IMG/VR virus record: IMGVR_UViG_3300042261_001312
Coordinates: 1 to 64,000 of that record
Direction: 5' to 3' (one strand)
DNA: 64,000 nt
A program made the position numbers and the translations under genes. The notes under the pieces are model-generated. The model saw only the letters and a list, made by a program, of their open reading frames with translations. It was not told the origin of the DNA and ran no database searches. Shown piece by piece: positions 1 to 55,418 of the stretch; position 1 is the first letter of the stretch; each line of letters begins with the position of its first letter.

Positions 1-205
1 TAATAGTAGTTGTTCAAAAGAATAACACCCCCCCCCCCCATGTACTCATTTTTAATTATCGAAATATTGTTGGTCTTGGAGTTTTTGAATTTGTCACATA
101 ACAACCATGATGTTTGTTATTATGTTGTGAATTGACATATCTGTCTGTTGAACATGACATGAATAATATTATTATAAATAAAGCCAATAGTGTTCTCATA
201 TAATT

Positions 206-766
206 TTAATTAAAAAATGATTTTAAATTTTTCTCTTTGATTAATGTTTTTAATTTAGACACGTACTTTTTATCCTCGGCATAATTCTGTTGAAGGTAAT
301 CAAAGTAGTCATCTTCTGATTTTAAATCGTACAGATATGTGGCGGAATAAAGAGCATAATCATGCACAGATTCAATCCAGTCTTCATAATATGCGTGTTC
401 ATTATTCGTGCCTTTGGTAAGGTTAATTCTTACACTTGCTTCTTTCATTCCAAAGAGGTTATGATTCTCTTTGAAGATAGGTGAAGTAAAGAATGAAGTT
501 TCATGCATTGCTTGAGCAAGCACGATGTGAGGGAATTTAAAATGCAATCCCTTAATCTCTTTAACCAACTTTTCTTGATTAAAAGAATTATACTTGCCCA
601 TAATCAATTTGACTTCTGTTTCGGTATAATTGCTTTTGATGTTTGGTTTAACGGACAATCCCAATATCAAAGATATTAGTACAATGCCACCAAATGCTTT
701 CAATCCAACATCAAGCCATTTGACTTTGACGAATTGAAGTTTCTGTTTGTCATACTTGTAGAACAT
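206..766 (-). CDS. Glucosaminidase-domain (FlgJ/GH73-like) peptidoglycan hydrolase with N-terminal TM anchor
   Basis: LAQAMHETS...NHNLFGMK...YEDWIESVHDY...YAEDKKY motifs; hydrophobic segment at aa 20-38. Confidence 0.75.
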   Translation of the reverse strand: MFYKYDKQKLQFVKVKWLDVGLKAFGGIVLISLILGLSVKPNIKSNYTETEVKLIMGKYNSFNQEKLVKEIKGLHFKFPHIVLAQAMHETSFFTSPIFKENHNLFGMKEASVRINLTKGTNNEHAYYEDWIESVHDYALYSATYLYDLKSEDDYFDYLQQNYAEDKKYVSKLKTLIKEKNLKSFFN

Positions 767-838
767 AGCAATATTATTTTAGTTGTACATTGGTATTATA
801 CGTACATTGATTAATAATTGTTACAATACGTTTTTTAA

Positions 839-1156
839 TTAATAATCACTAACACGTTCTGTTGTGCCAACGTACAATGCGCCAACACGTTCTGCGGTTT
901 TATTATATCTTTTGTTGAAGTAGATTAACAATTCAGATTCGAATTTACTTATATCAAAATCTTTTATTAATTTATTAATCTCAATCATATCCCACCAATA
1001 GTACAATAGTGTATTAGGTTTATGGAAATAACCATATGGGTCAAAACCAAATTTTAATTTCTTATTTATACCATCGGTGAATTTAGACATGGTGATTATG
1101 CCACTCTTACGTTCATTTAAATTACCATACAACTTTTTAAATAATTCTTCGTACAT
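839..1156 (-). CDS. Hypothetical protein
   Basis: Open frame on local coding strand, AT-rich leader. Confidence 0.6.
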   Translation of the reverse strand: MYEELFKKLYGNLNERKSGIITMSKFTDGINKKLKFGFDPYGYFHKPNTLLYYWWDMIEINKLIKDFDISKFESELLIYFNKRYNKTAERVGALYVGTTERVSDY

Positions 1157-1176
1157 TGGTATATGTGTATTATTAA

Positions 1177-1329
1177 TTAAAAATGATTACGATTGTCTTT
1201 ACGACTATATGCTTTCTTTGATTTATGTACTTTGGTGACGGATTTAAATCTACCATCATTCTCCATTTCAGCATCACGTGAACCTTTACGACTTGCTTTA
1301 ATAAATGGGTCAAGTTTTTTCTTCTTCAT
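1177..1329 (-). CDS. Small basic protein (50 aa) MKKKKLDPFIKASRKGSRDAEMENDGRFKSVTKVHKSKKAYSRKDNRNHF
   Basis: Translated by hand; follows ECF promoter 1417 and hairpin 1348; leader ttaatttaaaaacaATG. Confidence 0.7.
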   Translation of the reverse strand: MKKKKLDPFIKASRKGSRDAEMENDGRFKSVTKVHKSKKAYSRKDNRNHF

Positions 1330-1347
1330 TGTTTTTAAATTAAAAAA

Positions 1348-1382
1348 GGTGCAGTTGCTATGGTAGGCAAAAATTCTGCACC
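1348..1382 (-). ncRNA. Conserved hairpin motif, copy 1
   Basis: GGTGCAG-aattt-TTGC-ctaccata-GCAA-CTGCACC then U-run. Confidence 0.7.
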
Positions 1383-1444
1383 CTTGTAGATTAAAACAAA
1401 AACATTGAATTTGTTATACGTACATTGGTACAGAAAGGTTACAA

Positions 1445-1609
1445 CTACTTACTATCATTAACTTCATAGTCCAGAATTTCGCTATCAAGTACATCGAATC
1501 CTTCACCCGAATTGAATGAGTAATCAATTTGTTCCATTACTTCAGATAGTTCAATATCTGTGTCAATGACAAGTCATACTTTTACTTCCAAGAATATTTT
1601 GCGTGACAT
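1445..1609 (-). pseudogene. Small acidic protein with in-frame TGA at codon 12 (MSRKIFLEVKV*LVIDTDIELSEVMEQIDYSFNSGEGFDVLDSEILDYEVNDSK)
   Basis: Good start context; TGA at 1574-1576; protein-like frame continues to TAG at 1445. Confidence 0.55.
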
Positions 1610-1681
1610 AACTTTAATTTAAAATTGTACATTATATTAAATGTCCCAACCATTTTAATTAGTGGTTGGGACATTATTAAT

Positions 1682-2257
1682 TTATCTCCACAAATATCTC
1701 TGATATGCATTCTCATTAAGAAGGATTTCTTGCAACTTCACCAATTTCCTTGTTGTGTTTGCAGACGAAAGTGCTTCCTCAACAGAATTATACTTCTCTT
1801 CACCCGAACCACTATTTGTACGTATTCTGACCAAAATTTGTTCTTTGTAAGTAGTACCAAATTCGGTATTCCACCAATCGTTCCACAACTCAATCCTGAA
1901 GGAATAATCACTATGTCTCGGAATCTCAGGATTGCCTTCATTGTGTGCTTGAACTTTTATTCGATTATTATCGAAAGAATCAATTACTGCTTCAAACGGC
2001 AGATTGCCTTTCTCAAAATCGGCATTAAGCCTTTCAGCGACACTCTTGGCAGTTTGAGTGGTCAATTGACGAATTGCTTTCTGTTGAATTCCATGCTGAA
2101 TTCTGCCATTGTTGAATCTGTTGATTTCAGCACTCAGTTTATTGATGTCGATAATGCTGAATGGTTGGTCTTCCTGACTCTTATTCAGAGCAAGAAATTC
2201 ACTTTCAAGTTTTGCAATAATTTCAACTTGTTCTTGTGTTAAAGTCTTGTTTGCCAT
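1682..2257 (-). CDS. Hypothetical protein
   Basis: 191-aa frame on local coding strand. Confidence 0.7.
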   Translation of the reverse strand: MANKTLTQEQVEIIAKLESEFLALNKSQEDQPFSIIDINKLSAEINRFNNGRIQHGIQQKAIRQLTTQTAKSVAERLNADFEKGNLPFEAVIDSFDNNRIKVQAHNEGNPEIPRHSDYSFRIELWNDWWNTEFGTTYKEQILVRIRTNSGSGEEKYNSVEEALSSANTTRKLVKLQEILLNENAYQRYLWR

Positions 2258-2274
2258 GTCGTTATAGATTTTAA

Positions 2275-2553
2275 TTAAAGATATTGTTCAAGTTCTTGGA
2301 AGCCTTCAAGGAAGTCTTTTTCGTAAAGTTTTTTGCGAAGGACTTGACCGACCACTTGGTCAGTGTAGCCAAGTTCATCCAATAGGAATTCAGCAGTTTC
2401 GCCATCCATGCCAATTGACTTTAATGTTTCAATAGCCATGTTAAATCTGACTGCATTGTTGAAAGAAGAGAGTTGAGCAGTCTTTTTGAAATACTTTGGT
2501 AAATCAAAATCTTCGGGTTTAAGGGCATTGCCCAATGTTTCAAATAAGTTCAT
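2275..2553 (-). CDS. Hypothetical protein
   Basis: Directly behind ECF promoter 2582. Confidence 0.7.
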   Translation of the reverse strand: MNLFETLGNALKPEDFDLPKYFKKTAQLSSFNNAVRFNMAIETLKSIGMDGETAEFLLDELGYTDQVVGQVLRKKLYEKDFLEGFQELEQYL

Positions 2554-2608
2554 GGTAATTGTGTATTGGTTATGACAATTATACGGACATTAATTAAAAA
2601 TGGTTACA

Positions 2609-3040
2609 TTATATTTCAACAATATCATTAACCCTTTTAATTAAATTCTTCTCTATATTTTCTGAAACGTTTGAAGAATTAGGAAGAAATTCAACTTCTT
2701 CATCAAAACCAATGCGATAATACTCGGTAACAATATACCTATTATACTTCGTTTTATGATAGTTTGACCAAGCCAGAGCATTTGCAACCACAATGAACAA
2801 TGTGAACTTACGCAAAGTTACAACATTTTTTAAATTAAGTTGAATGACTTCACCATTGTAAAGAGTTAAGGTAAGAAACTCGCTACCTTTTTCCCTGTCA
2901 ACCTTTGTACAATAGTACGTTTCATTTGCACCACCCATGCCACCACCATAACTGAACAATACTGCTGTACAATCCTCAATGGTTTCTGTTGAAATAATGG
3001 TGGACGGACTATATGTACGTCCAATTTTAATCTTCTTCAT
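2609..3040 (-). CDS. Hypothetical protein
   Basis: 143-aa frame, typical leader. Confidence 0.7.
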   Translation of the reverse strand: MKKIKIGRTYSPSTIISTETIEDCTAVLFSYGGGMGGANETYYCTKVDREKGSEFLTLTLYNGEVIQLNLKNVVTLRKFTLFIVVANALAWSNYHKTKYNRYIVTEYYRIGFDEEVEFLPNSSNVSENIEKNLIKRVNDIVEI

Positions 3041-3062
3041 GTTATTGGTTTTTAATTAAAAA

Positions 3063-3260
3063 TTACATTGCAGTTGCCTTTATAACGGATTCAAGATCAT
3101 ACCCGTACTTTCGAGTATAGACGTGTTTAAAGTAATCTATGCCATTGGCTGAATGCATATACATAAAATTACCTACGTAGTTTATATCGCTTCGATTTAG
3201 GCTGAAAATGCCTTTTGCAATAGCATTGTCAAAGGCAGTATTTAAGTCAATAAATTCCAT
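3063..3260 (-). CDS. Hypothetical protein
   Basis: Behind ECF promoter 3289. Confidence 0.65.
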   Translation of the reverse strand: MEFIDLNTAFDNAIAKGIFSLNRSDINYVGNFMYMHSANGIDYFKHVYTRKYGYDLESVIKATAM

Positions 3261-3517
3261 AGGACAATATTTAATTGTGTATCTATTATACGGATATTAA
3301 TTAAAAAAGGTTACACAAATATAAAAAAGAAATCCCGCAGTTAAGGGAACTGCGGGACTCTAACCTAACCTAATTTAAACCCAATACATGACAAAACAAT
3401 TAAACGAGCGAGAAAGAAATATTTTTGTTACATTCAATTATACGAACATTAGTTCATAAAGGTTACATAAAAAGCAAAAAAAAAGGAAGATTTCTCTTCC
3501 CTTTTCTTAACTCCCTT

Positions 3518-4388
3518 TTAATTAAGGGAGTGGAGCATATATTCCAAGACTGTGGAATCGGTCATCATCCGCTTTTCGGGGATTGCAATATTGCGATTGT
3601 CATCGAAGATGTACTGATTTACTGCATTGTAAATGAGCCAGTCATTGATCACTCCGTTGTAGCCTAAATTCGGCTTGTCGGCTTCTTCCCTGATCTTCAG
3701 CATAATTGCGTTGATCGTATTGAATTTGGCGTTATCGACTGCCACGATGCCTGATGCCTTCAGAACTTCCTCAACTCTGTTGGTTGGGTTCATTGGGATT
3801 GACTTTGCCAATGCATTGAAACGACCAGTGATTTTGTCGATGACCAATTCTGCATTGTTGACAAAGAACACCAACATTTGGGTAAGGTCAGCCAAGGACT
3901 TTTTGATGTTGATGGTATGTTTGCCACCAATGGTAAGATTGAATTCCTTCATTTCCTTTACGGGAATGGTAAGACCATTAGTACAGACAAGGCGGAAATA
4001 ACCAAACATGATGCGATAGTTGGTCTTGCCATTGTAGGAGTGCTGAACGTTCAACTTCGGGAACACAACGTCATTTGTGCCTTCAATTGAGTAGGAATAC
4101 CTTTTGTCGGTAATCGTGTAGGATGCGTAGAAACGAACGTGTTTAACGTGCGTGTAAGTGGCTTTGAACTCAATCTCTTGGCTCTCAAGGATTGCTTCAA
4201 TGTTTGGGAAAATCTCTGCATTGGGAACTAACGCATACACGTTGGAGCAGTAGTTGAGTTTCATCTCACCACGTGGAGTTTGACCTACGACGATCTTTGC
4301 GTACTCGCTGTTGGTCAGATAATTCGACAGGGAAAAGAATGTCATTCAATCCGCAAGTTGTTGCACCTTCTTTAATTCTCTTTGCCAT
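3518..4388 (-). CDS. DUF932/DUF945-family protein, apparently frameshifted near 4315
   Basis: HSYNG...FRLVCTNG family motif; the start with good context (4388, behind promoter 4425) reads MAKRIKEGATTCGLNDILFPVELSD and is out of frame with the body NSEYAKIVVG. Confidence 0.7.
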
Positions 4389-4607
4389 GATAAATAATTT
4401 TTAATTGGTTTGTATATGCAATTATACGAATTTTAATTTAAAAAGGTTACATGATTTTTAATTTATTTTCTTATTTGAACAGATTCTAAATAAGTAGACT
4501 TTCGGGTAGGAGTGGATTACTCCCACCCATTTCTGACCTCGCCCATTCCCATACAAATATACGAATTTAAATTAAAAAAGGTTACATTTCTGCAACCTTT
4601 TTTTAAT

Positions 4608-4955
4608 TTATTTTTGAAGATAATCAACAACAAATTTCCATGCAGTATCAATATCATCACATAATAGTGCATGTTTTAATCCATCAAGTTCTTCGGGTTC
4701 TTCAGATTCGATTGATATTTTGGCAATCACTTGCATTAACCAATCCCAAGAGCAATCGTATTTTGGTTTATCGACAATTTGAAAATCTTCAATGTCGTCA
4801 TCAAAATAAGTTACAATTTCATCTTCGGGATAATCCTTCATACATTTCTTAATTGAAGAATATACCTCAAAAGAATATAAGTCATCCTTTGGTTCTTTAG
4901 GTTGATAATAACCCATAAACTTAACGATCAGTTTATTTCCTTCTTTCTTTTTCAT
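4608..4955 (-). CDS. Hypothetical protein (YDCSWDWLM motif)
   Basis: Behind promoter 4983. Confidence 0.65.
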   Translation of the reverse strand: MKKKEGNKLIVKFMGYYQPKEPKDDLYSFEVYSSIKKCMKDYPEDEIVTYFDDDIEDFQIVDKPKYDCSWDWLMQVIAKISIESEEPEELDGLKHALLCDDIDTAWKFVVDYLQK

Positions 4956-5028
4956 GTTAATTTATTTTTGATTTAAAGAATATACGCATCTTAATTAAAA
5001 AAGGTTACATTTCTGCAACCTTTTTTAA

Positions 5029-5268
5029 TTAAAGTTGAATGAACTCATTAAGCACCCAATCAATTTTGACTTCGTTGTTCTCATTGTGCCAATCAATAAA
5101 ATCTTCAATTGAATAATCACTTTCAAGAACATCACGAAGATAAGGTTGAAAATCTGTCCAAGACTTACGAATTAAGTCCATGAATTTCGTAAAGTTCATT
5201 GGTTCTTCTGGAGTAACTAAACCGATAATATCTTCGGTTTCTGTGTCGTGTAAAGTAACTACATACAT
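5029..5268 (-). CDS. Hypothetical acidic protein
   Basis: Open frame with typical leader. Confidence 0.65.
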   Translation of the reverse strand: MYVVTLHDTETEDIIGLVTPEEPMNFTKFMDLIRKSWTDFQPYLRDVLESDYSIEDFIDWHNENNEVKIDWVLNEFIQL

Positions 5269-5287
5269 GATTTTTAATTTAAGTTTG

Positions 5288-5359
5288 TAGTCGGAGCAGG
5301 ACTCGAACCTGCATACATAGCCACGTTCGCCATGCGCTAACCAATTACTATATCCGACT
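5288..5359 (-). ncRNA. tRNA-like RNA with non-canonical anticodon loop GAACGTG
   Basis: Acceptor AGTCGGA/TCCGACT, T-arm GCAGG-TTCGAGT-CCTGC; no U33. Confidence 0.6.
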
Positions 5360-5428
5360 AAGAGTCCGTGCTTTCCGAACTGTCAAATGCTTCATAACAC
5401 TTAGGCATTTTAGCATTAACTAACCACG

Positions 5429-5604
5429 TAGTCAGAACAGGACTCGAACCTGTAAGTCACATCTATTCCTACTTTGCTCCCAAGTACCTATCATATGTAA
5501 TTAGTATTAAACCATCTATCTTACATAATCAATATCGAAGCATTTGGTTTTTTATTACTGCCACTCACTCGTAGAGTGTGCGTCTGCCATTCCGCCATCC
5601 GACT
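5429..5604 (-). ncRNA. tRNA-like RNA with about 100 nt insertion between D and T arms
   Basis: Acceptor AGTCGGA/TCTGACT, Leu/Ser-type D arm GGCGGAATGGCAGACGC, T-arm ACAGG-TTCGAGT-CCTGT. Confidence 0.6.
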
Positions 5605-5669
5605 GTGTTCTACTTTTGATTTTTAATTTAGTAATCGCAGAATCAAAAAGTAGTAAAATAACTGCGCTG

Positions 5670-5795
5670 TGATTGGAACAGGAATCGAACCTGTAACCTT
5701 GGCATGTTGCACCACCTGTGCCTCCTACGGGAATTGTGGAATCGAACCACTGCCCACCTCTGCCACCAATGAGTTACCTATTACTCCATCCAACC
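5670..5795 (-). ncRNA. tRNA-like RNA with two T-loops
   Basis: Acceptor GGTTGGA/TCCAATC, D arm GAGT-AATAGGTA-ACTC, GTGG-TTCGATT-CCAC and ACAGG-TTCGATT-CCTGT; 5' end 10 nt from promoter 5805. Confidence 0.6.
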
Positions 5796-5858
5796 ATTAT
5801 ATTATACGTTTTTTAATTAGAAAAGGTTACAAAGATAATCAATTTTTTTAAAAAGAAA

Positions 5859-5897
5859 AGAGTGCCGTTGCTATGGTGGGCAAAAATTCGGCACTCT
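5859..5897 (-). ncRNA. Conserved hairpin motif, copy 2
   Basis: AGAGTGCCG-aattt-TTGC-ccaccata-GCAA-CGGCACTCT then U-run; behind promoter 5919. Confidence 0.7.
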
Positions 5898-5940
5898 AAC
5901 GATCACAACATCTTAATATACGTATGGTAGAAAAGAAAGG

Positions 5941-6180
5941 TTACACTAAATCAGACCAGACGATTGAAATTGTGTAGTCACCATTACTCCACCAACCATC
6001 TTCCAGACATCCTTCCAGATAACTTTCAGCATCTGGACAACCATTCTCAATTGCTTTTGCTTTGAAAAGTGCTTCTGCTTTATCCACAACCTCTTGAGAA
6101 AGTTGTTCTTCCCACACTCCGAAGGATTCTACTCCAGAAATGCTATTGTCAACTACTTCAATAATGTTAATTACTCTCAT
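5941..6180 (-). CDS. Hypothetical acidic protein
   Basis: Open frame. Confidence 0.65.
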   Translation of the reverse strand: MRVINIIEVVDNSISGVESFGVWEEQLSQEVVDKAEALFKAKAIENGCPDAESYLEGCLEDGWWSNGDYTISIVWSDLV

Positions 6181-6199
6181 ATCGTTTTAAATTAAAAAG

Positions 6200-6379
6200 T
6201 TAATCAAATTCCCATTCAACAGAATCAGCAGTTTCCCATTTATCATCAATTAAAACTTGAAACTCTTCACCAATCCAACGATATGGTAATGGTTCTGAAT
6301 CAAGATAATATAACTTTCCAACGTGAACTGCAAGATTTGATTCTTGTAAATCTTTCCGTATTCTCGCTAATTTACTCAT
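6200..6379 (-). CDS. Small hypothetical protein (59 aa, MSKLARIRKDLQ...)
   Basis: Hand-translated; leader ttaattaaaacgacATG. Confidence 0.6.
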   Translation of the reverse strand: MSKLARIRKDLQESNLAVHVGKLYYLDSEPLPYRWIGEEFQVLIDDKWETADSVEWEFD

Positions 6380-6402
6380 GTCGTTTTAATTAAAAAGGTT
6401 AA

Positions 6403-6444
6403 AAGGGTGCAGTTGCTATGGTAGGCAATAAATTCTGCACCCTT
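6403..6444 (-). ncRNA. Conserved hairpin motif, copy 3
   Basis: AAGGGTGCAG-aattta-TTGC-ctaccata-GCAA-CTGCACCCTT. Confidence 0.7.
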
Positions 6445-6461
6445 GCTGAAAACCAGACTCT

Positions 6462-6581
6462 TTAATGCGTTATATATAAAATAAAAACCATTGTCGCTAA
6501 TGTCACAAAGAAAAGAATGATTCCAATGGATTCAATTGATTTTGATTTCTTTGCTTTTGATTTCTTTGCTTTTGCTTTCAT
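6462..6581 (-). CDS. Small membrane peptide (39 aa, MKAKAKKSKAKKSKSIESIGIILFFVTLATMVFILYITH)
   Basis: Behind promoter 6609; basic N-terminus plus one TM segment. Confidence 0.5.
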   Translation of the reverse strand: MKAKAKKSKAKKSKSIESIGIILFFVTLATMVFILYITH

Positions 6582-6740
6582 TGTGTTTATTATTGGTTGT
6601 ATCTATTATACGAATATTGATTAAGAAAGGTTACATAAAAAAGCGAAGGTGCGGTCATTCACTCCGCACCTTCTGTTAACCACTAATCATTATTAATCTA
6701 AAAATTGCTATGGAAGCAATACGTATAATCTTTTAAAGGG

Positions 6741-6781
6741 TGGAGTGCCGTTGCTATGGTAGGCAAAAATTCAGCACTCCA
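6741..6781 (-). ncRNA. Conserved hairpin motif, copy 4
   Basis: TGGAGTGCTG-aattt-TTGC-ctaccata-GCAA-CGGCACTCCA; behind promoter 6815. Confidence 0.7.
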
Positions 6782-6914
6782 AGTAGAATAGTAACGTTTC
6801 TAACTGATATATTATACGTATATTGGTACAGAAAGGTTACATATAAAAAGAAAAAACCTTCACTTTATTTTGTGAAGGTTTTTGTTGTTCGTCTAAATTA
6901 TATATAGATTACCT

Positions 6915-6956
6915 CTAGGGAGAACCTCTTTCACTATTCGGATTTAGTGTTTTCAT
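6915..6956 (-). CDS. Mini-ORF MKTLNPNSERGSP ending CCC-TAG-AGG-TAA
   Basis: Only ORF between promoter 6997 and terminator hairpin at about 6853-6882. Confidence 0.45.
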   Translation of the reverse strand: MKTLNPNSERGSP

Positions 6957-7023
6957 ACTGACTGACTTTTAATTTGCTAAAAAATGTTAATCATTATACG
7001 TACATTGCGTTGAAAAGGTTACA

Positions 7024-7281
7024 TTATCCAGCAGTACTTTTATAAGCAAGATTCCATACGTTATACGTTTTCTTAACCACATACAATTCAAAGTAACTAT
7101 CTGTGTTAGGTTGAACATTGTTAATGTGAATCACCTTATATGTTTCCATACCATACACATACTCAATGGGTTCTACACCTTTGTTAAAGTAATCCTTTAA
7201 GGAAAGTAATAACCATTTGAGGAATTCTTCACCAAAGGCTTCTTTGATTTTGTGTTGATTTCTTAAACTGAAACGTATCAT
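7024..7281 (-). CDS. Hypothetical protein
   Basis: Start MIRFSL overlaps the upstream stop (ATGA coupling). Confidence 0.65.
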   Translation of the reverse strand: MIRFSLRNQHKIKEAFGEEFLKWLLLSLKDYFNKGVEPIEYVYGMETYKVIHINNVQPNTDSYFELYVVKKTYNVWNLAYKSTAG

Positions 7282-7934
7282 TTTGATTTTACCTTTATTG
7301 AATATCCCCATTCTTTCATACCATTCTTTGACATATCGGTATCAGCAACAAACTTAATATTATTGGCTTGTGCTTTGATGAAGTCCATAGGATTGTCATA
7401 ATTGAATCTGTAATTGGGATATTTGTCTGCAATCTTTTTTATGTCAACACTAATCTCAACTACATATCTTTTGGTGAGAATATTCTTCTTGACGACTGGT
7501 TTCTTCTTTGGTTTTGGTATTAAACTTTTAACATCTTTCCATATGAGATCACCCATCTCATCTCCATCCCATAAGCCAATGCTACCATCATCATAATCAA
7601 TCTCACCGATGGTATATGCTTTGCGTTTGTAAACAATCATATCACCTTCACTGAATTGCAGTTGAAGTGGAATGTTTATTAATTTAGAATAATTGCCCTC
7701 ATCATCGATTTTAGTTTCCTCAAACAATTTTGCAAGGAGCGATGCAAGGTATTCAATATTCTTGGCACGTACATTCACGTTCTCATCATCCATTGCAACT
7801 TTATACAAGTGCAATATGCCTTCGAATGTTTTGGATTGTTTCTCATTGAGAGTATGGATATTCTCTTGGAGAATTTCAATGCCGTTCTCAATTGTATACC
7901 ATAATTCTTGGTAGCCATCAATTAATTCTTCCAT
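7278..7934 (-). CDS. Hypothetical protein
   Basis: 218-aa frame. Confidence 0.7.
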   Translation of the reverse strand: MEELIDGYQELWYTIENGIEILQENIHTLNEKQSKTFEGILHLYKVAMDDENVNVRAKNIEYLASLLAKLFEETKIDDEGNYSKLINIPLQLQFSEGDMIVYKRKAYTIGEIDYDDGSIGLWDGDEMGDLIWKDVKSLIPKPKKKPVVKKNILTKRYVVEISVDIKKIADKYPNYRFNYDNPMDFIKAQANNIKFVADTDMSKNGMKEWGYSIKVKSK

Positions 7935-7950
7935 CTTAATTAAAATTAGG

Positions 7951-8256
7951 TTAGTACAATCTCATTGTTTTAAGTTTGTCAACATCGACATACCTGTTTG
8001 AACCACCTGTGTAATCCTTGTAGTCCTTTGCAGTTCTGTAAAGCAATTTGGTATAACCAAAGTGTCTTACATCAGAACAACTGAAGTAAAATATTTGACC
8101 AAACTTGTTGGTAAAGAAGCCACTAAAGTAATAGAAGCCATAAGACATCTTTACATTAGTACATTGCATCTCTTTAAGATTTCGCATTATTCTTCGCCTT
8201 TCTCTGCTGAAGAATTCTTTGAAGTCTTGTCCTAAATCTTTTCCTTTGTAATTCAT
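7951..8256 (-). CDS. Conserved phage hypothetical protein (YRTAKDYKDYTGGSN)
   Basis: Behind promoter 8290. Confidence 0.7.
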   Translation of the reverse strand: MNYKGKDLGQDFKEFFSRERRRIMRNLKEMQCTNVKMSYGFYYFSGFFTNKFGQIFYFSCSDVRHFGYTKLLYRTAKDYKDYTGGSNRYVDVDKLKTMRLY

Positions 8257-8350
8257 CTCTCTTAATTTAAATTGGTTTGTACATTATTATACGTTTTTAA
8301 ATTAAAAAAGGTTACATTGCTGCAACCTCTTTTAATTTTCTGCTTTTGGT

Positions 8351-9073
8351 TTAGTTTAACCATTCTGCAAATACATCGGAGTAGTCATCCAAACTTTTCT
8401 CCCGAATCTCATTGTAGTTTGCTACATACTTCTCCGTGAATTTCTCCTCATTGAATTGTTTCAAGGAAGAAACATAGTGCAGGGCAAGTGCCATTCGGGA
8501 GGACATCTTGCTTCTCACGATTGCGGAGAGTTTCGCTGCAAGACTCAAAGTGTACTCAGTTTCTTTCAGCATATTCACTTTGAATGTGCCATCTTCGATC
8601 ATATCTGAAACATAACCACGTGACCGCCATCCGTACAACATTGAAGCAATTGTGGTGAAAGTGAAAGTGCAGGTCTTTTTAACATCCCTGAGAGTGATGT
8701 AATCAGGATAGTGCAGGTGGATGAACGTTTTGATGTAGTCACTCGGATTCCATTGCCTTTGTGTTGAATTCAACGATGCTACAAAGTGAACGATTTCCTC
8801 AACAGTTTTGAATTCAACATCAACTACGATGCCCGTGAATTCGATACCCAATTGTGTGGCTGTTGCCGCCCGATTCTGACCATCTGCAACGTAGTAGTAC
8901 TTCTTACCATCCGTGCTGAAAAGATCGGTGTAGATGAGGATGATTGCTCCGACAAAGCCATACTTTGCCATCTTTTCTGCTAACTCATTTCTGAAACCAT
9001 AATCCCTGTTGAAAGGTAAGTGATGTAATTTTTTGTAATCTTCTCTCGTCGTAAAATAAATAACTTTTTTCAT
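8351..9073 (-). CDS. ParB/Srx-like N-terminal domain protein
   Basis: YYVADGQNRAATA motif (DGQHR-type); behind promoter 9125. Confidence 0.55.
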   Translation of the reverse strand: MKKVIYFTTREDYKKLHHLPFNRDYGFRNELAEKMAKYGFVGAIILIYTDLFSTDGKKYYYVADGQNRAATATQLGIEFTGIVVDVEFKTVEEIVHFVASLNSTQRQWNPSDYIKTFIHLHYPDYITLRDVKKTCTFTFTTIASMLYGWRSRGYVSDMIEDGTFKVNMLKETEYTLSLAAKLSAIVRSKMSSRMALALHYVSSLKQFNEEKFTEKYVANYNEIREKSLDDYSDVFAEWLN

Positions 9074-9220
9074 AATGCGTTTGTTTTAAATTGTTGATAC
9101 TTAAATAATTGGTTGTAATAATTATACGAATCTAAATTCAAAAAGGTTACATAAATACTAAACTTTTTTTAATTAAAAAAGGGTGAAATTGCTTTCACCC
9201 TTTTAACCAATTAAAACATA

Positions 9221-9621
9221 TCAACCATAAACAATTTCATCGAACAATGCGTACTGAACAATTAAATCAGCCGTGTTTGCATCGTGATTGTCAAGTAGGT
9301 CTGACAGATTTTCGTTGTACTCGGTACAATACCATTTGATGCCTTCCAACATTTTCTCCCACGTCAACTCCCATTTGTCACTGCTTTCAGCATCGAACAA
9401 TATGAGAGTGCCACCATAACCAATAGCATCACTTGCGAATTGTACATTGGTCCATCTTCCTCAGATATGCCAAGGTAGTTCTTATTCTCATCCAATTTGA
9501 TGATTGCCTTGCGACACCAATAGTTAATGCCACCTTCTAAAGCAGACACAACAAGATTGTTAATATCTTCAGTTGTGAATTCGTGACTCTGCTCAATAGA
9601 TACTTTAAATTTCTTTTCCAT
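9221..9621 (-). pseudogene. Conserved phage protein split by a frameshift near 9452
   Basis: N-part ...SALEGGINYWC...; C-part in another frame NVQFASDAIGYGG...DANTADLIVQYALFDEIVYG to TGA at 9221. Confidence 0.6.
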
Positions 9622-9745
9622 AGTATGAATGATTTAATGGTTATATGTACATTGATACGAACATTAATTAAAAAAGGTTACAAAAAAGATAGGACATTGG
9701 CTTCAATGGTTGCACCCACATACTTTCCAATGCCCTATCAATAAT

Positions 9746-9985
9746 TTACTTCACCCCTGCCATTTTCTTCAACTCTGCTTTAATTGCCTTGGCGACAGTT
9801 CCTCTCCAAGTTCCCGCATTTGCAAGGAAATAGAGAACGATTGACTTCGCTGAGTCGTGGTAGTAGTTATCCGTGATCTTGTCCAGAGAGGACATTGCAT
9901 CTAAGTAAGGTACTGCACCAAAGTATACCTTTGTCCAGTCTTTTTTGATTTCTTTTGCGATCTGATACAGAGGACGTGTTTCCAT
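9746..9985 (-). CDS. Conserved phage hypothetical protein (RPLYQIAKEIKKDW...GAVPYLDAM...WRG)
   Basis: Recognisable small phage family of unknown function. Confidence 0.7.
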   Translation of the reverse strand: METRPLYQIAKEIKKDWTKVYFGAVPYLDAMSSLDKITDNYYHDSAKSIVLYFLANAGTWRGTVAKAIKAELKKMAGVK

Positions 9986-10015
9986 AATAATGAATTTAAT
10001 TGGTTAATAAATCAG

Positions 10016-10087
10016 TACTCCCACTCAGACTCGAACTGAGATTGACAGATTAGAAATCTGCTGTTCTATCCCTTGAACTATGGGAGC
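10016..10087 (-). tRNA. tRNA-Arg(TCT)
   Basis: Canonical cloverleaf, GCAGA-TTTCTAA-TCTGT; behind promoter 10098. Confidence 0.9.
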
Positions 10088-10124
10088 ATATCTGTTATAC
10101 GTTTCTTAATTTAAAAAGGTTACA

Positions 10125-10388
10125 TTAATATGTATAATAATCACGTATTGACATTCCTTGATACTCTTCCAGAGATTTAACAAATATCTCCCACAATTCG
10201 GCTTCGCCTTCCATTATCGCATCCTTAATTGCTTTTTTTGTTTCATATGTACCCATTTTCTCAGCAAACTTACTAACCGCTTCCTCAAAGTTGATTTTTG
10301 ATTGCATTTCACGTGCCTGTACTTTATCCTCAACTAATAATCCGTTTGACAATTTATAGGCTTCTACTTTTACTTTCTCCATTTCCAT
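10125..10388 (-). CDS. Hypothetical protein
   Basis: Behind promoter 10418. Confidence 0.65.
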   Translation of the reverse strand: MEMEKVKVEAYKLSNGLLVEDKVQAREMQSKINFEEAVSKFAEKMGTYETKKAIKDAIMEGEAELWEIFVKSLEEYQGMSIRDYYTY

Positions 10389-10447
10389 AACTAATAATTT
10401 TAATTGGTTATCTGTTATACGTTTCTTAATTTAAAAAGGTTACAATG

Positions 10448-10636
10448 CTACCTCATTTTTTTACTCGCATCTATAATGCTAATTAACTTTGCGTATAAGT
10501 ACAATAGTCCTATTATGATTAGGAAGGTAAACAATCCACCAAATGCTTCCATAATAAAATCGTAAAGGAATACATAAAAGAATAACATTGCTACAAAGAA
10601 TACTGTGGTTACGAACAATACTAAAAATGCTTTCAT
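10448..10636 (-). CDS. Small two-TM membrane protein
   Basis: Two hydrophobic stretches. Confidence 0.6.
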   Translation of the reverse strand: MKAFLVLFVTTVFFVAMLFFYVFLYDFIMEAFGGLFTFLIIIGLLYLYAKLISIIDASKKMR

Positions 10637-10692
10637 TGTATATGGTTTTAAGCGGTTATTTTTAATTAAAATTGAATGAGTGAACTATGCCC

Positions 10693-11481
10693 TTAATCAA
10701 GGGCATAGTCCTCTCTATACTTCTGTAATTCACTCTGCAAGGTTGCCCTCAATCTGAGTATATTTACCTTAACACTATTCAAAGGCATTTGACAGATTTC
10801 AGCAACTTCCTCATAAGACTTCTGCCTTAAAAAATGTGCTATTGCGATCTTCCTAAACTTCGGCTTCAACGTGCGGAATGCCTTTGCAACATCTGACAAT
10901 ACTTCCTTACTCTCAACACTTGCACTTGTATTGCTTTCAGCATTGATTTGGAAATATTCGTCACCATCAGCATCAACATAGTCGCTGATATTCGTATTGA
11001 TATTCTTGCGAACCTTCTTTGTTGAAGATACACCATATTCATTCTCAACCTCAACTTCTACTACTTTGGTAGCCTTGCGATAGTGGTCAACCATCTGATG
11101 ATAGGCAATACCTTTCAGCCACGTGTTGATCTTACTCATTTCCTTATCGTATGTAGCCAAATGCTTCTTAGCCTTCATAAAGGTATCATCGCAGATTTCC
11201 TCTGCGATTTCATAATGACCATTGCCCATTTTGAACTTCAGAAAGTTCAGAACTTCCTTATAGTATTTTGCATAGATTTCCTCAAAGGAAACTTCGGGAA
11301 TAACCAAACCATTGTCACATACCAAACGAACTGCAATTACAGTTTCAGTTGCAGTACCTTTGGCAATTGCCCAAGATTGTTTCATACAAGCGGAGAACAT
11401 TTCCATAGTCCTAACTGATTGACTACGAAACATTTGCCAAGCCCTTTTCATAATCTCTGATTTGTTGTAGGTCGTTTTCAT
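10693..11481 (-). CDS. ECF-family RNA polymerase sigma factor with short N-terminal extension
   Basis: Sigma2 region FEEIYAKY...AEEICDDTFMKA...WLKGIAYHQMVDHYRK; sigma4 region LKPKFRK...KSYEEVAEICQMPLNSVKVNILR; N-terminal IMKRAWQMFR...MKQSWAIAK helix; start set at MKTTY. Confidence 0.9.
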   Translation of the reverse strand: MKTTYNKSEIMKRAWQMFRSQSVRTMEMFSACMKQSWAIAKGTATETVIAVRLVCDNGLVIPEVSFEEIYAKYYKEVLNFLKFKMGNGHYEIAEEICDDTFMKAKKHLATYDKEMSKINTWLKGIAYHQMVDHYRKATKVVEVEVENEYGVSSTKKVRKNINTNISDYVDADGDEYFQINAESNTSASVESKEVLSDVAKAFRTLKPKFRKIAIAHFLRQKSYEEVAEICQMPLNSVKVNILRLRATLQSELQKYREDYALD

Positions 11482-11519
11482 AGCGAATAGATTAAAAAGT
11501 GAATGAATGATTAACAATG

Positions 11520-11550
11520 CAAATATAACTCTATTTTAATTAAAAACAAT
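11520..11550 (-). promoter_or_regulatory. Bacteroidota primary-sigma promoter for the ECF sigma gene
   Basis: TATATTTG (TAnnTTTG -7 box) at 11520-11527 with ATTG 19 nt upstream. Confidence 0.6.
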
Positions 11551-11561
11551 AGCCAAACGTA

Positions 11562-11611
11562 ATTTATTCTCATTCTAAATAACAACCACCTTATTTAGAA
11601 TCTGTCTAAAT
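11562..11611. promoter_or_regulatory. Two Fur-box-like palindromes
   Basis: ATTTATTCTCATTCTAAAT (11562) and ATTTAGAATCTGTCTAAAT (11593); 15/19 and 16/19 to ATTTAGAATTATTCTAAAT. Confidence 0.5.
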
Positions 11612-11707
11612 TTCAATCTTAATTAAAAATAATTACATTTTGGAGTATCACGTATTAAAATAATACCTAATATTGTATCAGTTATTCACCACTTAATTTT
11701 TTACATT

Positions 11708-12319
11708 ATGAAAAACATTATTGATTCAATCGTTAAGAAAGTTGTAAACCTCTTCGCAAACCCAATGACTTCTGCCCTTACGGGTTTATCTTCAGCCTCA
11801 TTCGTAGGCATTCGCAACTACGTTTCCTCTACTTCAGGGGAAATTGCAAACCACGTTATTCTTGCTAACTTTTCTTATGGCAATGCCGTAAAAAATGACC
11901 TGAAAAAATTGCAAAACACAACTCAATCCGACATTCAGGAAATTGTTGAAAAGTTTGGCTTCTCTGTCGAATTAATTAATACTGCAATAGCAAAGTTAAT
12001 TGATTCCTTTGTTAAAAATCAGAACCCCGAAACACGATCAAACCAAAGCAAGGGACAAACTGATGCATACGTTAATATCTCAGATTGCATCCGTTTGCAT
12101 ATCGAATCACAAAAGATTTATATCTATGGCTTGGGCATTAGCAAGGAAATTATCCAAAAAGGTGAATATAAATCTGTTAACTCTCGTGAATTAACACTAT
12201 GCCAAAATGCAGTAAAAAAACACTTCAACTTATCAACTGCCAAATTTAAGCAGTATATAATTGAACCTGACCAAATTGGTTCAGTTAAAGTTAATGGTAC
12301 TGAATATGCGGTGAATTAA
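11708..12319 (+). CDS. Hypothetical protein divergent from the sigma gene
   Basis: 203-aa frame followed by terminator GTGCAG-agaaat-CTGCAC-U-run at about 12331-12358. Confidence 0.75.
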   Translation: MKNIIDSIVKKVVNLFANPMTSALTGLSSASFVGIRNYVSSTSGEIANHVILANFSYGNAVKNDLKKLQNTTQSDIQEIVEKFGFSVELINTAIAKLIDSFVKNQNPETRSNQSKGQTDAYVNISDCIRLHIESQKIYIYGLGISKEIIQKGEYKSVNSRELTLCQNAVKKHFNLSTAKFKQYIIEPDQIGSVKVNGTEYAVN

Positions 12320-25855: not shown

Positions 25856-25908
25856 AACATATTTTTTATGCAATGATACGAAAAAGAAATGTAATATGTT
25901 ACTAAAAT

Positions 25909-39045: not shown

Positions 39046-39072
39046 TACGTTGCAAAGATATAAAATGTTACA
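39046..39072 (-). promoter_or_regulatory. Composite promoter of tRNA cluster A
   Basis: TGTAAC-N17-CGTA with nested TATCTTTG and overlapping GTATTTA. Confidence 0.8.
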
Positions 39073-39123
39073 ATATCTGCAAACTATTTTTAACTTTTTT
39101 TAAAAAATATTTTTAATTATTTC

Positions 39124-46784: not shown

Positions 46785-46827
46785 CAAAGATACACATAAA
46801 TACGTAACTTCCAAATAAAAAGTTACA
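46785..46827 (-). promoter_or_regulatory. Composite promoter of tRNA cluster B
   Basis: TGTAAC-N17-CGTA (46801-46827), GTATTTAT and TATCTTTG (46785-46792). Confidence 0.8.
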
Positions 46828-49846: not shown

Positions 49847-50349
49847 TTTGTTGCAAATATTATTCCACGTTTCAATTTTGCATTCGGAAATATTTCCTTA
49901 ACAATTTCGAGATAATCTTTCTGTTTTAAATAATGCTGAAATGTACCAGATTTGGTCACTCCAGAGGCTTTATTTGGATTCATATATGTTGATCGAACAA
50001 ATATATATCCACCATCTTTTAGTGCATCAAAAGCCAATTTAAGCGTGTTTATTTGTATCTCACGTTCTTTAATAACATTTAGCACGTTGAAAATTGTTAC
50101 TGTTTCAACTTTACGTGACATACAAAATTCTAACATAAGTGCATTATGCACTTCGCTCCTATTATACGGATCATATATGCAATTTGTTACACTTTTTTCT
50201 GATAATTTTTCAGACATCAAATCGTATTTTCCGCCACCAATATCAAAATTAACAGTGTTGGCTTTCCACCCAAAATATTTATCAATGATTCCAAAACCTG
50301 CTGGAACTTGTTTCATTGAAGTTTTGGCTGACGTATATTCTTGTTCCAT
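49843..50349 (-). CDS. Small SAM-dependent methyltransferase-fold protein
   Basis: FDIGGGKYD, YDPYN, NVLNVI. Confidence 0.7.
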   Translation of the reverse strand: MEQEYTSAKTSMKQVPAGFGIIDKYFGWKANTVNFDIGGGKYDLMSEKLSEKSVTNCIYDPYNRSEVHNALMLEFCMSRKVETVTIFNVLNVIKEREIQINTLKLAFDALKDGGYIFVRSTYMNPNKASGVTKSGTFQHYLKQKDYLEIVKEIFPNAKLKRGIIFATK

Positions 50350-55391: not shown

Positions 55392-55418
55392 TACGTAAAT
55401 AATGTTTAAAAGGTTACA
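55392..55418 (-). promoter_or_regulatory. ECF-type promoter
   Basis: TGTAAC-N17-CGTA. Confidence 0.75.

What the first reader, a model, noticed from the sequence alone, without database searches (positions are those of the whole stretch)
799..11550. Phage-encoded ECF sigma factor with its visible regulon (23 perfect promoters)
TGTAAC-N17-CGTA occurs 18 times in the first 10.5 kb and at 34060, 39046, 46801, 55392 and 59000, with a variant at 25877. It fits the ECF consensus (AAC in -35, CGT in -10; compare B. subtilis SigX/SigW). The sigma gene closes this arm and itself has a host TAnnTTTG promoter, suggesting a cascade from host sigma to phage ECF to regulon. A host ECF could alternatively read these promoters.
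Basis: partly seen in the sequence, partly recalled or inferred. Interest (0 to 1): 0.75.

Follow-up and report, generated by a model that had tools for sequence, protein, structure and literature searches.

The report
Phage sigma factor and its promoters
A 328-kb uncultured freshwater phage, probably of Bacteroidota, carries about 60 near-identical ECF-type promoters (TGTAAC-N17-CGTATAAT) and an ECF-type sigma factor gene at the head of the densest array, which points to a phage-run transcription cascade of a known kind in a little-studied phage group.

Summary
TGTAAC-N17-CGTA occurs 24 times in the window, all on the minus strand, against 0.03 expected. The AGTAAC variant at 25877 is real.

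The whole 327,676-bp phage has 56 exact sites plus 5 with one mismatch. The spacing is strictly N17. Of the 61 sites, 55 are intergenic and 58 point at the next gene. The full consensus TGTAACcTTTt...CGTATAAt matches the B. subtilis SigW-type ECF promoter, including the T-tract.

The ORF at 10693-11481(-) is a two-domain ECF-type sigma (TIGR02937; best solved relative SigW; ECF fold). A Bacteroidota-type TTG-N19-TATATTTG promoter precedes it. It heads the arm rather than closing it.

Motif, sigma and their synteny recur in ten related phage records, nine of about 250-357 kb and one a 128-kb fragment.

One caveat: the phage has a second ECF-type sigma at 239 kb and a second promoter class, GTATTTAT, in front of terminase, portal and sheath genes. 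Assigning sigma 1 to TGTAAC is therefore inference (about 0.7). No transcript data exist. This is a new member of a known kind.

The parts
10693..11481 (-). Sigma 1: ECF-type sigma factor gene (262 aa from the ATG at 11481; stop at 10693-10695). It has a conserved ~45-aa N-terminal helical hairpin, then sigma domain 2, a long linker with a predicted beta-hairpin, and sigma domain 4.
   Evidence: Pfam r2 plus r4_2. TIGR02937 82 bits. Best PDB sequence hit is SigW 5wuq, E=4e-8, across both domains. AF2 model with Foldseek: all top hits are ECF sigmas. Homologue alignment A1.
11520..11549 (-). Host-type (Bacteroidota sigma-A) promoter of sigma 1: TTG-N19-TATATTTG, ending 39 nt before the ATG.
   Evidence: The consensus TTTG/TAnnTTTG comes from PMC6847099. 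Function is inferred.
10448..10636 (-). 62-aa hydrophobic ORF directly after sigma 1 with no promoter of its own, probably co-transcribed. It is not a conserved anti-sigma.
   Evidence: It is conserved only in the close relative L009.
10418..10444 (-). ECF-type promoter, followed by the 87-aa ORF 10125-10388
10098..10124 (-). ECF-type promoter, followed by tRNA-Arg(TCT) 10015-10087 and then ORF 9746-9985
9656..9682 (-). ECF-type promoter, followed by ORF 9364-9621
9125..9151 (-). ECF-type promoter, followed by the 240-aa ORF 8351-9073. A terminator hairpin lies just upstream.
8290..8316 (-). ECF-type promoter, followed by ORFs 7951-8256 and 7278-7934. Its -35 and T-run form the 3' arm of a terminator-like hairpin (8304-8333).
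6997..7023 (-). ECF-type promoter, followed by a short ORF
6815..6841 (-). ECF-type promoter, followed by the conserved-loop hairpin element 6722-6780
6609..6635 (-). ECF-type promoter, followed by a short ORF that ends at hairpin element 6384-6442
5919..5945 (-). ECF-type promoter, followed by the conserved-loop hairpin element 5839-5897
5805..5831 (-). ECF-type promoter, followed by an array of tRNA-like sequences (about 5290-5800, four GGTTCGA T-arm motifs) and then ORF 5029-5268
   Evidence: Rfam tRNA at 32.3 bits for 5288-5359.
4983..5009 (-). ECF-type promoter, followed by ORF 4608-4955. Its -35 lies in a terminator-like hairpin (4997-5026).
4560..4586 (-). ECF-type promoter, followed by a ~100-nt non-coding stretch that is repeated at G000 327378-327471. 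Its -35 lies in a terminator-like hairpin (4574-4603).
4425..4451 (-). ECF-type promoter, followed by the DUF932 gene 3518-4345
3441..3467 (-). ECF-type promoter, followed by a short transcript that would end at terminator 3330-3360
3289..3315 (-). ECF-type promoter, followed by ORF 3063-3260
2582..2608 (-). ECF-type promoter, followed by ORF 2275-2553
1417..1443 (-). ECF-type promoter, followed by the conserved-loop hairpin element 1326-1384
799..825 (-). ECF-type promoter, followed by the glucosaminidase-domain gene 206-766
25877..25903 (-).
   Evidence: matrix score 21.9
34060..34086 (-). ECF-type promoter, followed by tRNA with anticodon CTA (33976-34047)
39046..39082 (-). Composite promoter. 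A complete host-type TTG-N19-TATCTTTG is superimposed on TGTAAC-N17-CGTA, ahead of a tRNA cluster (38808 down to 37694).
46801..46827 (-). ECF-type promoter ahead of tRNA-Lys and tRNA-Tyr (46331-46604). A host-type box overlaps it at 46785-46814.
50165..50191 (-). Exact motif inside ORF 49843-50349. It may be an internal promoter or a chance site.
55392..55418 (-). ECF-type promoter, followed by ORF 54632-55333
59000..59036 (-). Composite host-type plus ECF-type promoter (TTG-N19-TATATTTG nested in the spacer)

Best explanation
The window is the first 64 kb of a circularly assembled 327.7-kb phage genome from lake water. Its translation signals indicate a Bacteroidota host. TGTAACcTTTt-N-CGTATAAt is a promoter for an ECF-type sigma factor bound to the host core RNA polymerase. 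The most likely reader is the phage's own sigma 1 (10693-11481, minus strand).

Proposed sequence of events, with inferred steps marked. Host sigma-A holoenzyme starts at TTG-N19-TATATTTG and makes sigma 1 (inferred). Sigma 1 joins host core enzyme; its domain 4 reads TGTAAC plus the T-tract, and its domain 2 reads CGTA (inferred from family knowledge). This switches on about 61 units: the minus-strand arm 11.5 kb -> 1 -> 327.6 -> 306.6 kb, the plus-strand arm 266-306 kb, and scattered units at 34-65 kb.

These units encode small ORFs, tRNAs, short hairpin RNAs, DUF932, a glucosaminidase, homing endonucleases, an adenylosuccinate synthetase and a helicase. Many are single-gene modules bounded by terminator hairpins that overlap the next -35 element.

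A second phage sigma (239203-239829, after a DnaG-like primase gene) most likely reads the second phage promoter class, GTATTTAT. That class has no -35 element and lies 22-32 nt before the structural genes.
For: The motif is real and highly specific: 56 exact sites, N17 only, controls 0-2. Only 5 further near-matches exist, and 0 in shuffled sequence.

The sites behave like promoters: 55 of 61 are intergenic in a genome that is 9.8% non-coding, and 58 of 61 are co-oriented with the next gene. About half lie 17-63 nt before a called ATG; most others precede tRNAs or short non-coding units.

The architecture equals the B. subtilis ECF consensus tGAAACnTTTt ... CGTA, where CGTA is the SigW-selective -10 (PMC5758882; logo).

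Sigma 1 is an ECF-type sigma. Its best solved relative by sequence is SigW across both domains (E=4e-8), and its domain-4 helix keeps the conserved R-x-R.

Sigma 2 matches solved ECF sigmas well only in domain 2. Its family-invariant domain-4 helix TSSTVSNKINYIKTKLKK lacks those arginines. This fits the late class, which has no -35 element.

There are two phage sigmas and two phage-specific promoter classes, and no gp55-like factor was found.

In the related records G001-G010 the motif recurs 27-63 times against 0-9 for the reversed-pattern controls. It also recurs 5-20 times in each of four metagenome loci. The sigma 1 homologue lies within 1 kb upstream of a dense co-directional array in G000, G001, G004, G006, G007, G008, L005 and L009.

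Sigma 1 is preceded by a full host-type promoter and by neither phage motif.

Sigma 1 diverges fast (26-55% identity), and its motif varies between phages in spacer (N16 or N17) and flank. Sigma 2 (43-60%) and GTATTTAT are nearly invariant.
Against: There is no transcript or biochemical evidence. No listed public RNA run holds this phage.

Every complete relative has both sigma 1 and sigma 2, so co-occurrence cannot separate them.

The host-type promoter upstream of sigma 1 is seen in G000 and G004 but not in G003 or G005. TAnnTTTG alone is not enriched upstream of genes.

No anti-sigma partner and no autoregulatory promoter were found, both of which are usual for cellular ECF sigmas.

Host Flavobacterium ECF promoters also carry a CGT -10 box (PMC9723704). 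One of 151 Bacteroidia genomes shows 13 motif hits against 1 control.

Spacer preference does not track any obvious sigma 1 feature.
Confidence: 0.7

Rival explanations
1. The promoters are real ECF-type promoters, but the reader is the phage's second ECF-type sigma (G000 239203-239829). Sigma 1 would then read something else, for example the GTATTTAT class.
For: Sigma 2 also passes TIGR02937 (74 bits) and has r2 and r4_2 matches. It co-occurs with the motif in every complete relative. Its operon also has a host-type promoter.
Against: Its domain-4 recognition helix lacks the ECF-typical arginines, yet it is invariant across the family. That fits a different target or a partner protein. It lies behind two GTATTTAT motifs, in an operon with a DnaG-like primase gene, far from the TGTAAC arrays. 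Its near-invariance matches the invariant GTATTTAT, not the variable TGTAAC spacing. Sigma 1, not sigma 2, is syntenic with the arrays.
Confidence: 0.12
2. A host ECF sigma reads the promoters. The phage would be exploiting a stress sigma of its Bacteroidota host, and the phage sigmas would serve other roles.
For: Flavobacterial ECF promoters carry a CGT -10 box, and flavobacteria have several ECF sigmas (PMC9723704). One sampled Bacteroidia genome (G066) has 13 chromosome-wide hits to TGTAAC-N16/17-CGTATAA against 1 control.
Against: In the other 150 Bacteroidia genomes the motif is at chance level, 0-5 hits per genome of mostly 2-7 Mb, similar to the controls. The phage has about 130 per Mb. 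Spacer preference differs sharply between related phages (N17 only in G000, N16 only in G003), which is easier to explain by a co-evolving phage factor. The phage sigma gene is conserved at the head of the arrays. Host ECFs are normally held inactive by anti-sigmas (family knowledge). The best host ECFs in four sampled Bacteroidota genomes are only 27-28% identical to sigma 1.
Confidence: 0.08
3. The sites work by sigma appropriation, as at T4 middle promoters. TGTAAC would be the box of a phage activator, and TATAAT (within CGTATAAT) would be read by the host primary sigma.
For: The -10 region extends to TATAAT. T4-like jumbo phages use such schemes (PMC7824862).
Against: Bacteroidota primary sigma reads TAnnTTTG, not TATAAT (PMC6847099). 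The host signals here are Bacteroidota-like: no Shine-Dalgarno motif, and A-rich positions at -11 to -13 and -3. The invariant part is CGTA, not TATAAT. The TGTAAC-to-TATAAT distance of 19 bp is fixed like a sigma spacer. The -35-proximal T-tract is an ECF feature.
Confidence: 0.04
4. The repeats are mainly mobile or recombination cassettes that shuffle small genes, like the promoter-stem-loop modules of T4-type phages, and have little promoter role.
For: The motif often overlaps terminator-like hairpins and brackets single small ORFs. Assembly contigs break at these repeats.
Against: Only the two sigma-contact blocks, TGTAAC(c)TTT and CGTATAAt, are conserved while the spacer varies. Orientation and distance to start codons are promoter-like. 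The same bipartite core persists in phages whose surrounding sequence is unrelated. A shuffling role could coexist with promoter function.
Confidence: 0.03

Closest known systems
B. subtilis ECF sigma W (and sigma X, M, V) and their promoters
   Same: Sigma 1 has the same two-domain sigma2/sigma4 build. SigW is its best solved relative by sequence. The promoter has the same build: an AAC-containing -35, a -35-proximal T-tract, a 16-17 bp spacer and a CGTA -10 (PMC5758882, against the logo).
   Different: Sigma 1 is phage-encoded. It has no adjacent anti-sigma and no autoregulatory promoter. It carries an extra conserved N-terminal helical hairpin and a long linker. Its -35 is TGTAAC rather than TGAAAC. 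It drives about 61 phage units, not a stress regulon. Sequence identity is only about 20%.
Bacillus phage SPO1 gp28 and gp33/34 sigma cascade (recalled from the literature, not re-read here)
   Same: The host sigma makes a phage sigma that redirects host core polymerase to a phage promoter class, and a second phage sigma activity serves late genes.
   Different: The sigma lineages and promoter sequences differ. Here both sigmas are ECF-type, and each has a host-type promoter upstream (sigma 1 at its own gene, sigma 2 at its operon), so the order may be parallel rather than strictly serial.
Coliphage phiEco32 gp36 (with gp79)
   Same: It is a phage-encoded, distantly sigma-like two-domain factor that directs host core enzyme to middle and late promoters (PMC12276001). 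Its structure 9m7y_F appears among the fold matches to sigma 1 (rank 29).
   Different: gp36 promoters are defined by a -10-like AATGTA, and gp36 needs gp79 to stabilise its C-terminal domain. That resembles sigma 2 with GTATTTAT more than sigma 1, whose promoters have a strong canonical -35.
T4 gp55 late sigma with the TATAAATA late promoter
   Same: The second promoter class here, GTATTTAT(A), is a single -10-type box without a -35 element, lying in front of structural genes.
   Different: No gp55-family gene (phrog_234) was found in this genome. The box sequence and the candidate factor (a two-domain ECF-type sigma) are different.

Membership tests
ECF (group 4) sigma-70 family | Only sigma domains 2 and 4 are present, with no region 1.1 or region 3 | tested here: met
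   Pfam finds Sigma70_r2 and Sigma70_r4_2 only. TIGR02937 sigma70-ECF scores 82.2 bits against a cut-off of 42.9. The AF2 model shows two helical domains joined by a linker.
ECF (group 4) sigma-70 family | Three-dimensional fold matching solved ECF sigmas | tested here: met
   In the Foldseek PDB search the top 23 hits (E<=1e-3, probability 1.00) are all ECF sigmas: SigH, SigE, AlgU, SigW, RpoE, SigL and BldN. The model's mean pLDDT is 74, so domain folds are reliable but domain arrangement is not.
ECF (group 4) sigma-70 family | Cognate promoter with AAC in the -35 and CGT in the -10, 16-17 bp apart | tested here: met
   TGTAAC-N17-CGTA occurs 56 times. Relatives use N16 or N17. The link to this particular sigma is inferred.
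ECF (group 4) sigma-70 family | Co-encoded anti-sigma factor | tested here: not met
   The downstream 62-aa two-TM ORF has no anti-sigma domain and is conserved only in one close relative. An anti-sigma is typical of the family but not a universal requirement.
ECF (group 4) sigma-70 family | Positive autoregulation (own promoter upstream of the sigma gene) | tested here: not met
   No TGTAAC-type site lies upstream of sigma 1 in the four genomes examined (G000, G003, G004, G005). A host-type promoter is there instead in G000 and G004.
ECF (group 4) sigma-70 family | Binds core RNA polymerase and directs initiation at its promoters | not testable with these tools
   This needs in vitro transcription or in vivo reporters. 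No RNA run was listed that holds the phage.
Phage sigma cascade (SPO1-type temporal control) | The phage sigma gene is transcribed by the host holoenzyme | tested here: inconclusive
   TTG-N19-TATATTTG lies 39 nt before the ATG. A host-type box is also seen in G004 but not in G003 or G005. No expression data exist.
Phage sigma cascade (SPO1-type temporal control) | Distinct promoter classes on distinct gene sets | tested here: met
   The TGTAAC class precedes small-ORF arms, tRNAs and nucleotide or DNA enzymes. The GTATTTAT class precedes terminase, portal and tail sheath genes. There are also 22 intergenic host-type promoters.
T4 gp55-type late sigma | A gp55-family protein is present | tested here: not met
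   phrog_234, the family of T4 gp55, gives no match in G000 at E<=1.

The most novel reading that the evidence does not exclude
A whole family of uncultured ~300-357-kb freshwater Bacteroidota phages would run a three-class transcription programme using two anti-sigma-free ECF-type sigmas. Sigma 1 would read a canonical but extremely stringent ECF promoter whose spacer rule switches between N16 and N17 among relatives. Sigma 2 would read a -35-less GTATTTAT box. Composite host-plus-phage promoters on tRNA clusters, and -35 elements embedded in terminator hairpins, would give compact single-gene modules. If so, this is a natural set of sigma/promoter pairs orthogonal to the unusual Bacteroidota primary sigma.
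Probability: 0.5. Interest if true: 0.6.

Novelty: new member of a known kind. Interest (0 to 1): 0.5.

Why it matters
Phage-encoded sigmas that retarget host polymerase are textbook for Bacillus and E. coli phages. In my searches I found no described case for phages of Bacteroidota, whose primary sigma and promoters are atypical and whose genetic tools are scarce.

This locus gives a cleanly defined, family-conserved candidate pair of sigma and promoter, plus a second pair. These could be tested directly in Flavobacterium or Bacteroides as orthogonal expression parts.

The locus also gives a promoter-based temporal map for an uncultured jumbo-phage lineage. The N16/N17 switch between relatives is a natural experiment on what sets spacer length in ECF sigmas.

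The concept itself is not new.

Tried and rejected
1. Megablast of 1-12000 against cultured phages found no match. tblastn of sigma 2 found none. Sigma 1 gave only 23-27% hits to uncultured phage sigmas, including one annotated sigma-W in a crAss-like phage.
2. Transcript evidence: both searches for sequencing runs listed DNA holders only. Laying the three 'RNA' runs of the same study on 4400-10300 gave 0 contigs, so no transcription start could be mapped. This is not evidence of absence.
3. I tried to separate sigma 1 from sigma 2 by co-occurrence. All complete relatives have both. G010 has the motif and only sigma 2, but it is 75% complete and its array runs to the contig end, so it is uninformative.
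4. Distant sigma 1-like loci L016-L022 lack the motif and belong to different phages.
5. gp55-like late sigma: none found.
6. Anti-sigma next to sigma 1: none conserved.
7. The N-terminal 46 aa searched as a stand-alone protein gave no candidates. It matches only phrog_8305, of unknown function.
8. TAG recoding, suggested by the tRNA-CTA, is not supported. TAG ends 26 of 405 ORFs, and read-through does not extend them.
9. Rfam found only tRNAs. The weak ylbH hit at 4507-4607 (27.6 bits against a gathering score of 50) is rejected.
10. Spacer preference showed no consistent relation to sigma 1 linker length or the N-terminal extension.
11. The E. coli-type promoter scan gave no enrichment: 48 found against 50 expected.
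12. A genome-contig scan with alignment A1 failed for lack of a conserved stretch.

Full report
**What is there**

The pattern TGTAAC-N17-CGTA occurs 24 times in the 64-kb window, always on the minus strand. Dinucleotide-preserving shuffles give 0.03. Eighteen sites lie between 799 and 10444. The others start at 34060, 39046, 46801, 50165, 55392 and 59000.

The window is the first 64 kb of a 327,676-bp IMG/VR virus record. The record's ends overlap by about 153 bp, differing only in a poly-C run length and one SNP. The assembly is therefore circular or terminally redundant. DNA runs that hold it come from lake and freshwater metagenomes.

Genome-wide there are 56 exact sites (16 plus-strand, 40 minus-strand), against 0 and 2 for the reversed pattern. 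Spacers of 14-16 and 18-20 give 0-1 sites each. A weight matrix built from the sites finds only five more, each with one mismatch, and none in shuffled sequence. The motif is unusually invariant.

The sites form three blocks. One is the minus strand from 11.5 kb through the record ends to 306.6 kb. One is the plus strand at 266-306 kb. The third is a scatter at 34-65 kb. Only two exact sites and one near-match lie between 66 and 263 kb.

**Do the sites behave like promoters?**

Of the 61 sites, 55 are intergenic in a genome that is 9.8% non-coding. Fifty-eight point at the next gene. About half end 17-63 nt before a called ATG. Most of the rest precede tRNAs or short non-coding units.

The aligned consensus is TGTAACcTTTt ... 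T.CGTATAAt. This is the ECF promoter design worked out in B. subtilis: an AAC-containing -35, a -35-proximal homopolymeric T-tract (tGAAACnTTTt), and a CGTA -10 that is selective for sigma W (PMC5758882).

It is not an E. coli-type promoter, since that scan shows no enrichment. It is also not the Bacteroidota primary promoter TTTG/TAnnTTTG (PMC6847099).

**The sigma gene**

The ORF 10693-11517(-) really begins at the ATG at 11481, giving 262 aa. The N-terminus from that ATG is conserved in homologues, although the collection's own gene call is shorter.

It has Sigma70_r2 and Sigma70_r4_2 only. It passes TIGR02937 sigma70-ECF at 82 bits against a cut-off of 42.9. Its best solved relative by sequence is B. 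subtilis SigW across both domains (E=4e-8).

An AlphaFold model (mean pLDDT 74) shows four parts: a confident N-terminal helical hairpin (residues 7-40), domain 2, a long linker with a beta-hairpin, and domain 4. Foldseek returns only ECF sigmas at the top, and phiEco32 gp36 at rank 29.

No anti-sigma is conserved beside it, and no TGTAAC site precedes it. Instead, TTG-N19-TATATTTG lies 39 nt before the ATG.

On the minus strand the gene is the first gene of the arm. It heads the arm rather than closing it.

**Host**

Start codons lack Shine-Dalgarno motifs: 17 genes have one in the expected position, against 15 in a control window. Adenine is enriched at -11 to -13 (0.59-0.70) and at -3 (0.64). 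That is the Bacteroidota pattern (PMC6847099).

Full host-type promoters (TTG-N18-20-TAHHTTTG) number 54, and 22 of them are intergenic. The nearest cellular homologues of the phage's adenylosuccinate-synthetase-like gene are all Bacteroidota. No cultured phage is related.

The genome has a second ECF-type sigma at 239203-239829(+). It scores 74 bits on TIGR02937 and overlaps the end of a DnaG-like primase gene.

There is also a second over-represented upstream motif, GTATTTAT(A). It occurs 95 times in upstream regions against 13.7 expected. It usually lies 22-32 nt before the ATG and has no -35 element. It precedes the terminase large subunit, portal and tail sheath genes, so it looks like the late class.

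No gp55-family gene is present. There are thus two phage sigmas and two phage promoter classes. The sigma 2 operon has a host-type promoter (237193-237222) and two GTATTTAT boxes.

**Which sigma reads TGTAAC?**

This is inferred, not shown. Five points favour sigma 1.

- It aligns with SigW through domain 4 and keeps the R-x-R of the recognition helix. Sigma 2's domain-4 helix TSSTVSNKINYIKTKLKK is invariant in its family but lacks those arginines. That suits a class with no -35 element.
- The sigma 1 homologue sits within 1 kb upstream of a dense co-directional array in G000, G001, G004, G006, G007, G008 and the metagenome contigs L005 and L009.
- Sigma 1 carries neither phage motif upstream.
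- Sigma 1 evolves fast (26-55% identity), and its motif varies in spacer (N17 only in G000, N16 almost only in G003, mixed elsewhere) and in the base after TGTAAC. Sigma 2 (43-60%) and GTATTTAT are nearly constant.
- The arms rich in TGTAAC sites look like early or middle genes: small ORFs, tRNAs, homing endonucleases, an adenylosuccinate synthetase, a RecD/Pif1-like helicase, DUF932 and a glucosaminidase.

Two points count against certainty. All complete relatives carry both sigmas. There are no transcript data.

**Host ECF alternative**

Flavobacterial ECF promoters also have a CGT -10 box (PMC9723704). In 151 sampled Bacteroidia genomes, TGTAAC-N16/17-CGTATAA occurs at about the rate of the reversed control. 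The exception is one genome with 13 hits against 1. Host ECFs in four sampled Bacteroidota genomes are only 27-28% identical to sigma 1. The phage carries about 130 sites per Mb. A host reader is possible but less economical.

**Verdict**

It works like the SPO1 or phiEco32 sigma-replacement schemes, and its promoters look like SigW promoters. On sequence and fold it qualifies as an ECF-type sigma, but it lacks the anti-sigma and autoregulation typical of cellular ECFs. It is a new member of a known kind, of moderate interest.

Noticed in passing
G000 239203-239829(+) (L001:2703-3329), outside the window: A second ECF-type sigma gene (208 aa) overlaps the end of a DnaG-like primase gene. It is conserved at 43-60% identity in 45 viral contigs, with an invariant C-terminal helix TSSTVSNKINYIKTKLKK.
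   Followed up: yes
window 20322-20328(-), 21217-21223(-), 35156-35162(-), 56136-56142(-), 61273-61279(+), and about 120 sites genome-wide: A second promoter-like motif, aGTATTTATa..aAAa, lies 22-32 nt before start codons and has no -35 element. It precedes terminase, portal and tail sheath genes and is conserved in G003, G004 and G005. It is probably the late class.
   Followed up: yes
window 33976-34047(-): A tRNA with anticodon CTA (an amber suppressor, which ARAGORN calls 'Pyl') lies directly behind an ECF-type promoter. The genome shows no sign of TAG recoding: TAG ends 26 of 405 ORFs, and read-through does not extend them.
   Followed up: partly
window 10015-63911: There are 33 tRNA genes in the window, in clusters on the minus strand. 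Several clusters lie behind ECF-type or composite promoters.
   Followed up: partly
window 5290-5800(-): Four GGTTCGA(T/G)TCC T-arm-like motifs lie in about 500 nt behind promoter 5805-5831. ARAGORN calls none of them. Rfam gives one tRNA hit at 32.3 bits (5288-5359) and one at 23 bits. They may be odd, split or degenerate tRNAs.
   Followed up: no
window 1326-1384, 5839-5897, 6384-6442, 6722-6780 (all minus strand): There are four copies of a hairpin with an invariant 21-nt loop, AATTT(A)TTGCCYACCATAGCAA. The stems differ between copies by compensatory changes (CAG/CTG against CCG/CGG). Three copies end in a T-run and the 6722-6780 copy does not. Three copies lie directly behind ECF-type promoters, which would give RNAs of about 70 nt. 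No Rfam family matches, no antisense target exists in the phage, and G003-G005 lack the element.
   Followed up: partly
window 4574-4603, 4997-5026, 8304-8333 (minus strand): The -35 element and T-tract (TGTAACCTTTTTT) form the descending arm of a terminator-like hairpin with an upstream AAAAGGTTGCA. The terminator of one unit therefore overlaps the promoter of the next. Relatives place hairpins inside the spacer instead, for example G001 cccTGTAacatcTACAGGGgttttt.
   Followed up: partly
window 39046-39082 and 59000-59036; G000 272617, 322140: These are composite promoters. A complete host-type TTG-N19-TA(t/c)(a/c)TTTG is nested in register inside TGTAAC-N17-CGTA, and the box ends 3 nt before CGTA. 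The same arrangement recurs in G001, G006, G007, G008 and G010. Two of the four G000 examples precede tRNAs.
   Followed up: partly
window 4452-4559(-) and G000 327378-327471(-): Two similar ~100-nt non-coding stretches (...gaggtc(a/t)gaaa(t/a)gggtgggagtaatcca...) each lie directly behind an ECF-type promoter. No Rfam family reaches its threshold.
   Followed up: no
window 1-153 and G000 327524-327676: The record ends overlap by about 153 bp, with a poly-C length difference and one SNP. The 'linear' record is really a closed or terminally redundant assembly, and the minus-strand arm continues across the join.
   Followed up: yes
L009 10589-12318 (relative contig): An IS200/IS605-type element (Y1 transposase plus an OrfB/TnpB-like gene) is inserted in the small-ORF arm of a relative, between two ECF-type promoters.
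   Followed up: no
G066 (unnamed Bacteroidia genome, 4.8 Mb): It has 13 chromosome-wide hits to TGTAAC-N16/17-CGTATAA against 1 for the control. This may be a cellular ECF regulon with the same specificity. Its best ECF is only 27% identical to sigma 1.
   Followed up: partly
window 10693-11481, residues 1-45 of sigma 1: A conserved N-terminal helical hairpin (MKxxYNKSxIMKRAWKLF...MFSxCLKQSWxIAK) is fused to the sigma in one sub-clade (G000, G001, G002 and metagenome homologues). It is absent from the G003, G004 and G005 orthologues. It matches only phrog_8305, of unknown function.
   Followed up: partly
G000 262631-263626(-) and 268534-269301(+): LAGLIDADG homing-endonuclease genes lie directly behind ECF-type promoters. 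An adenylosuccinate-synthetase-like gene follows the second one.
   Followed up: no
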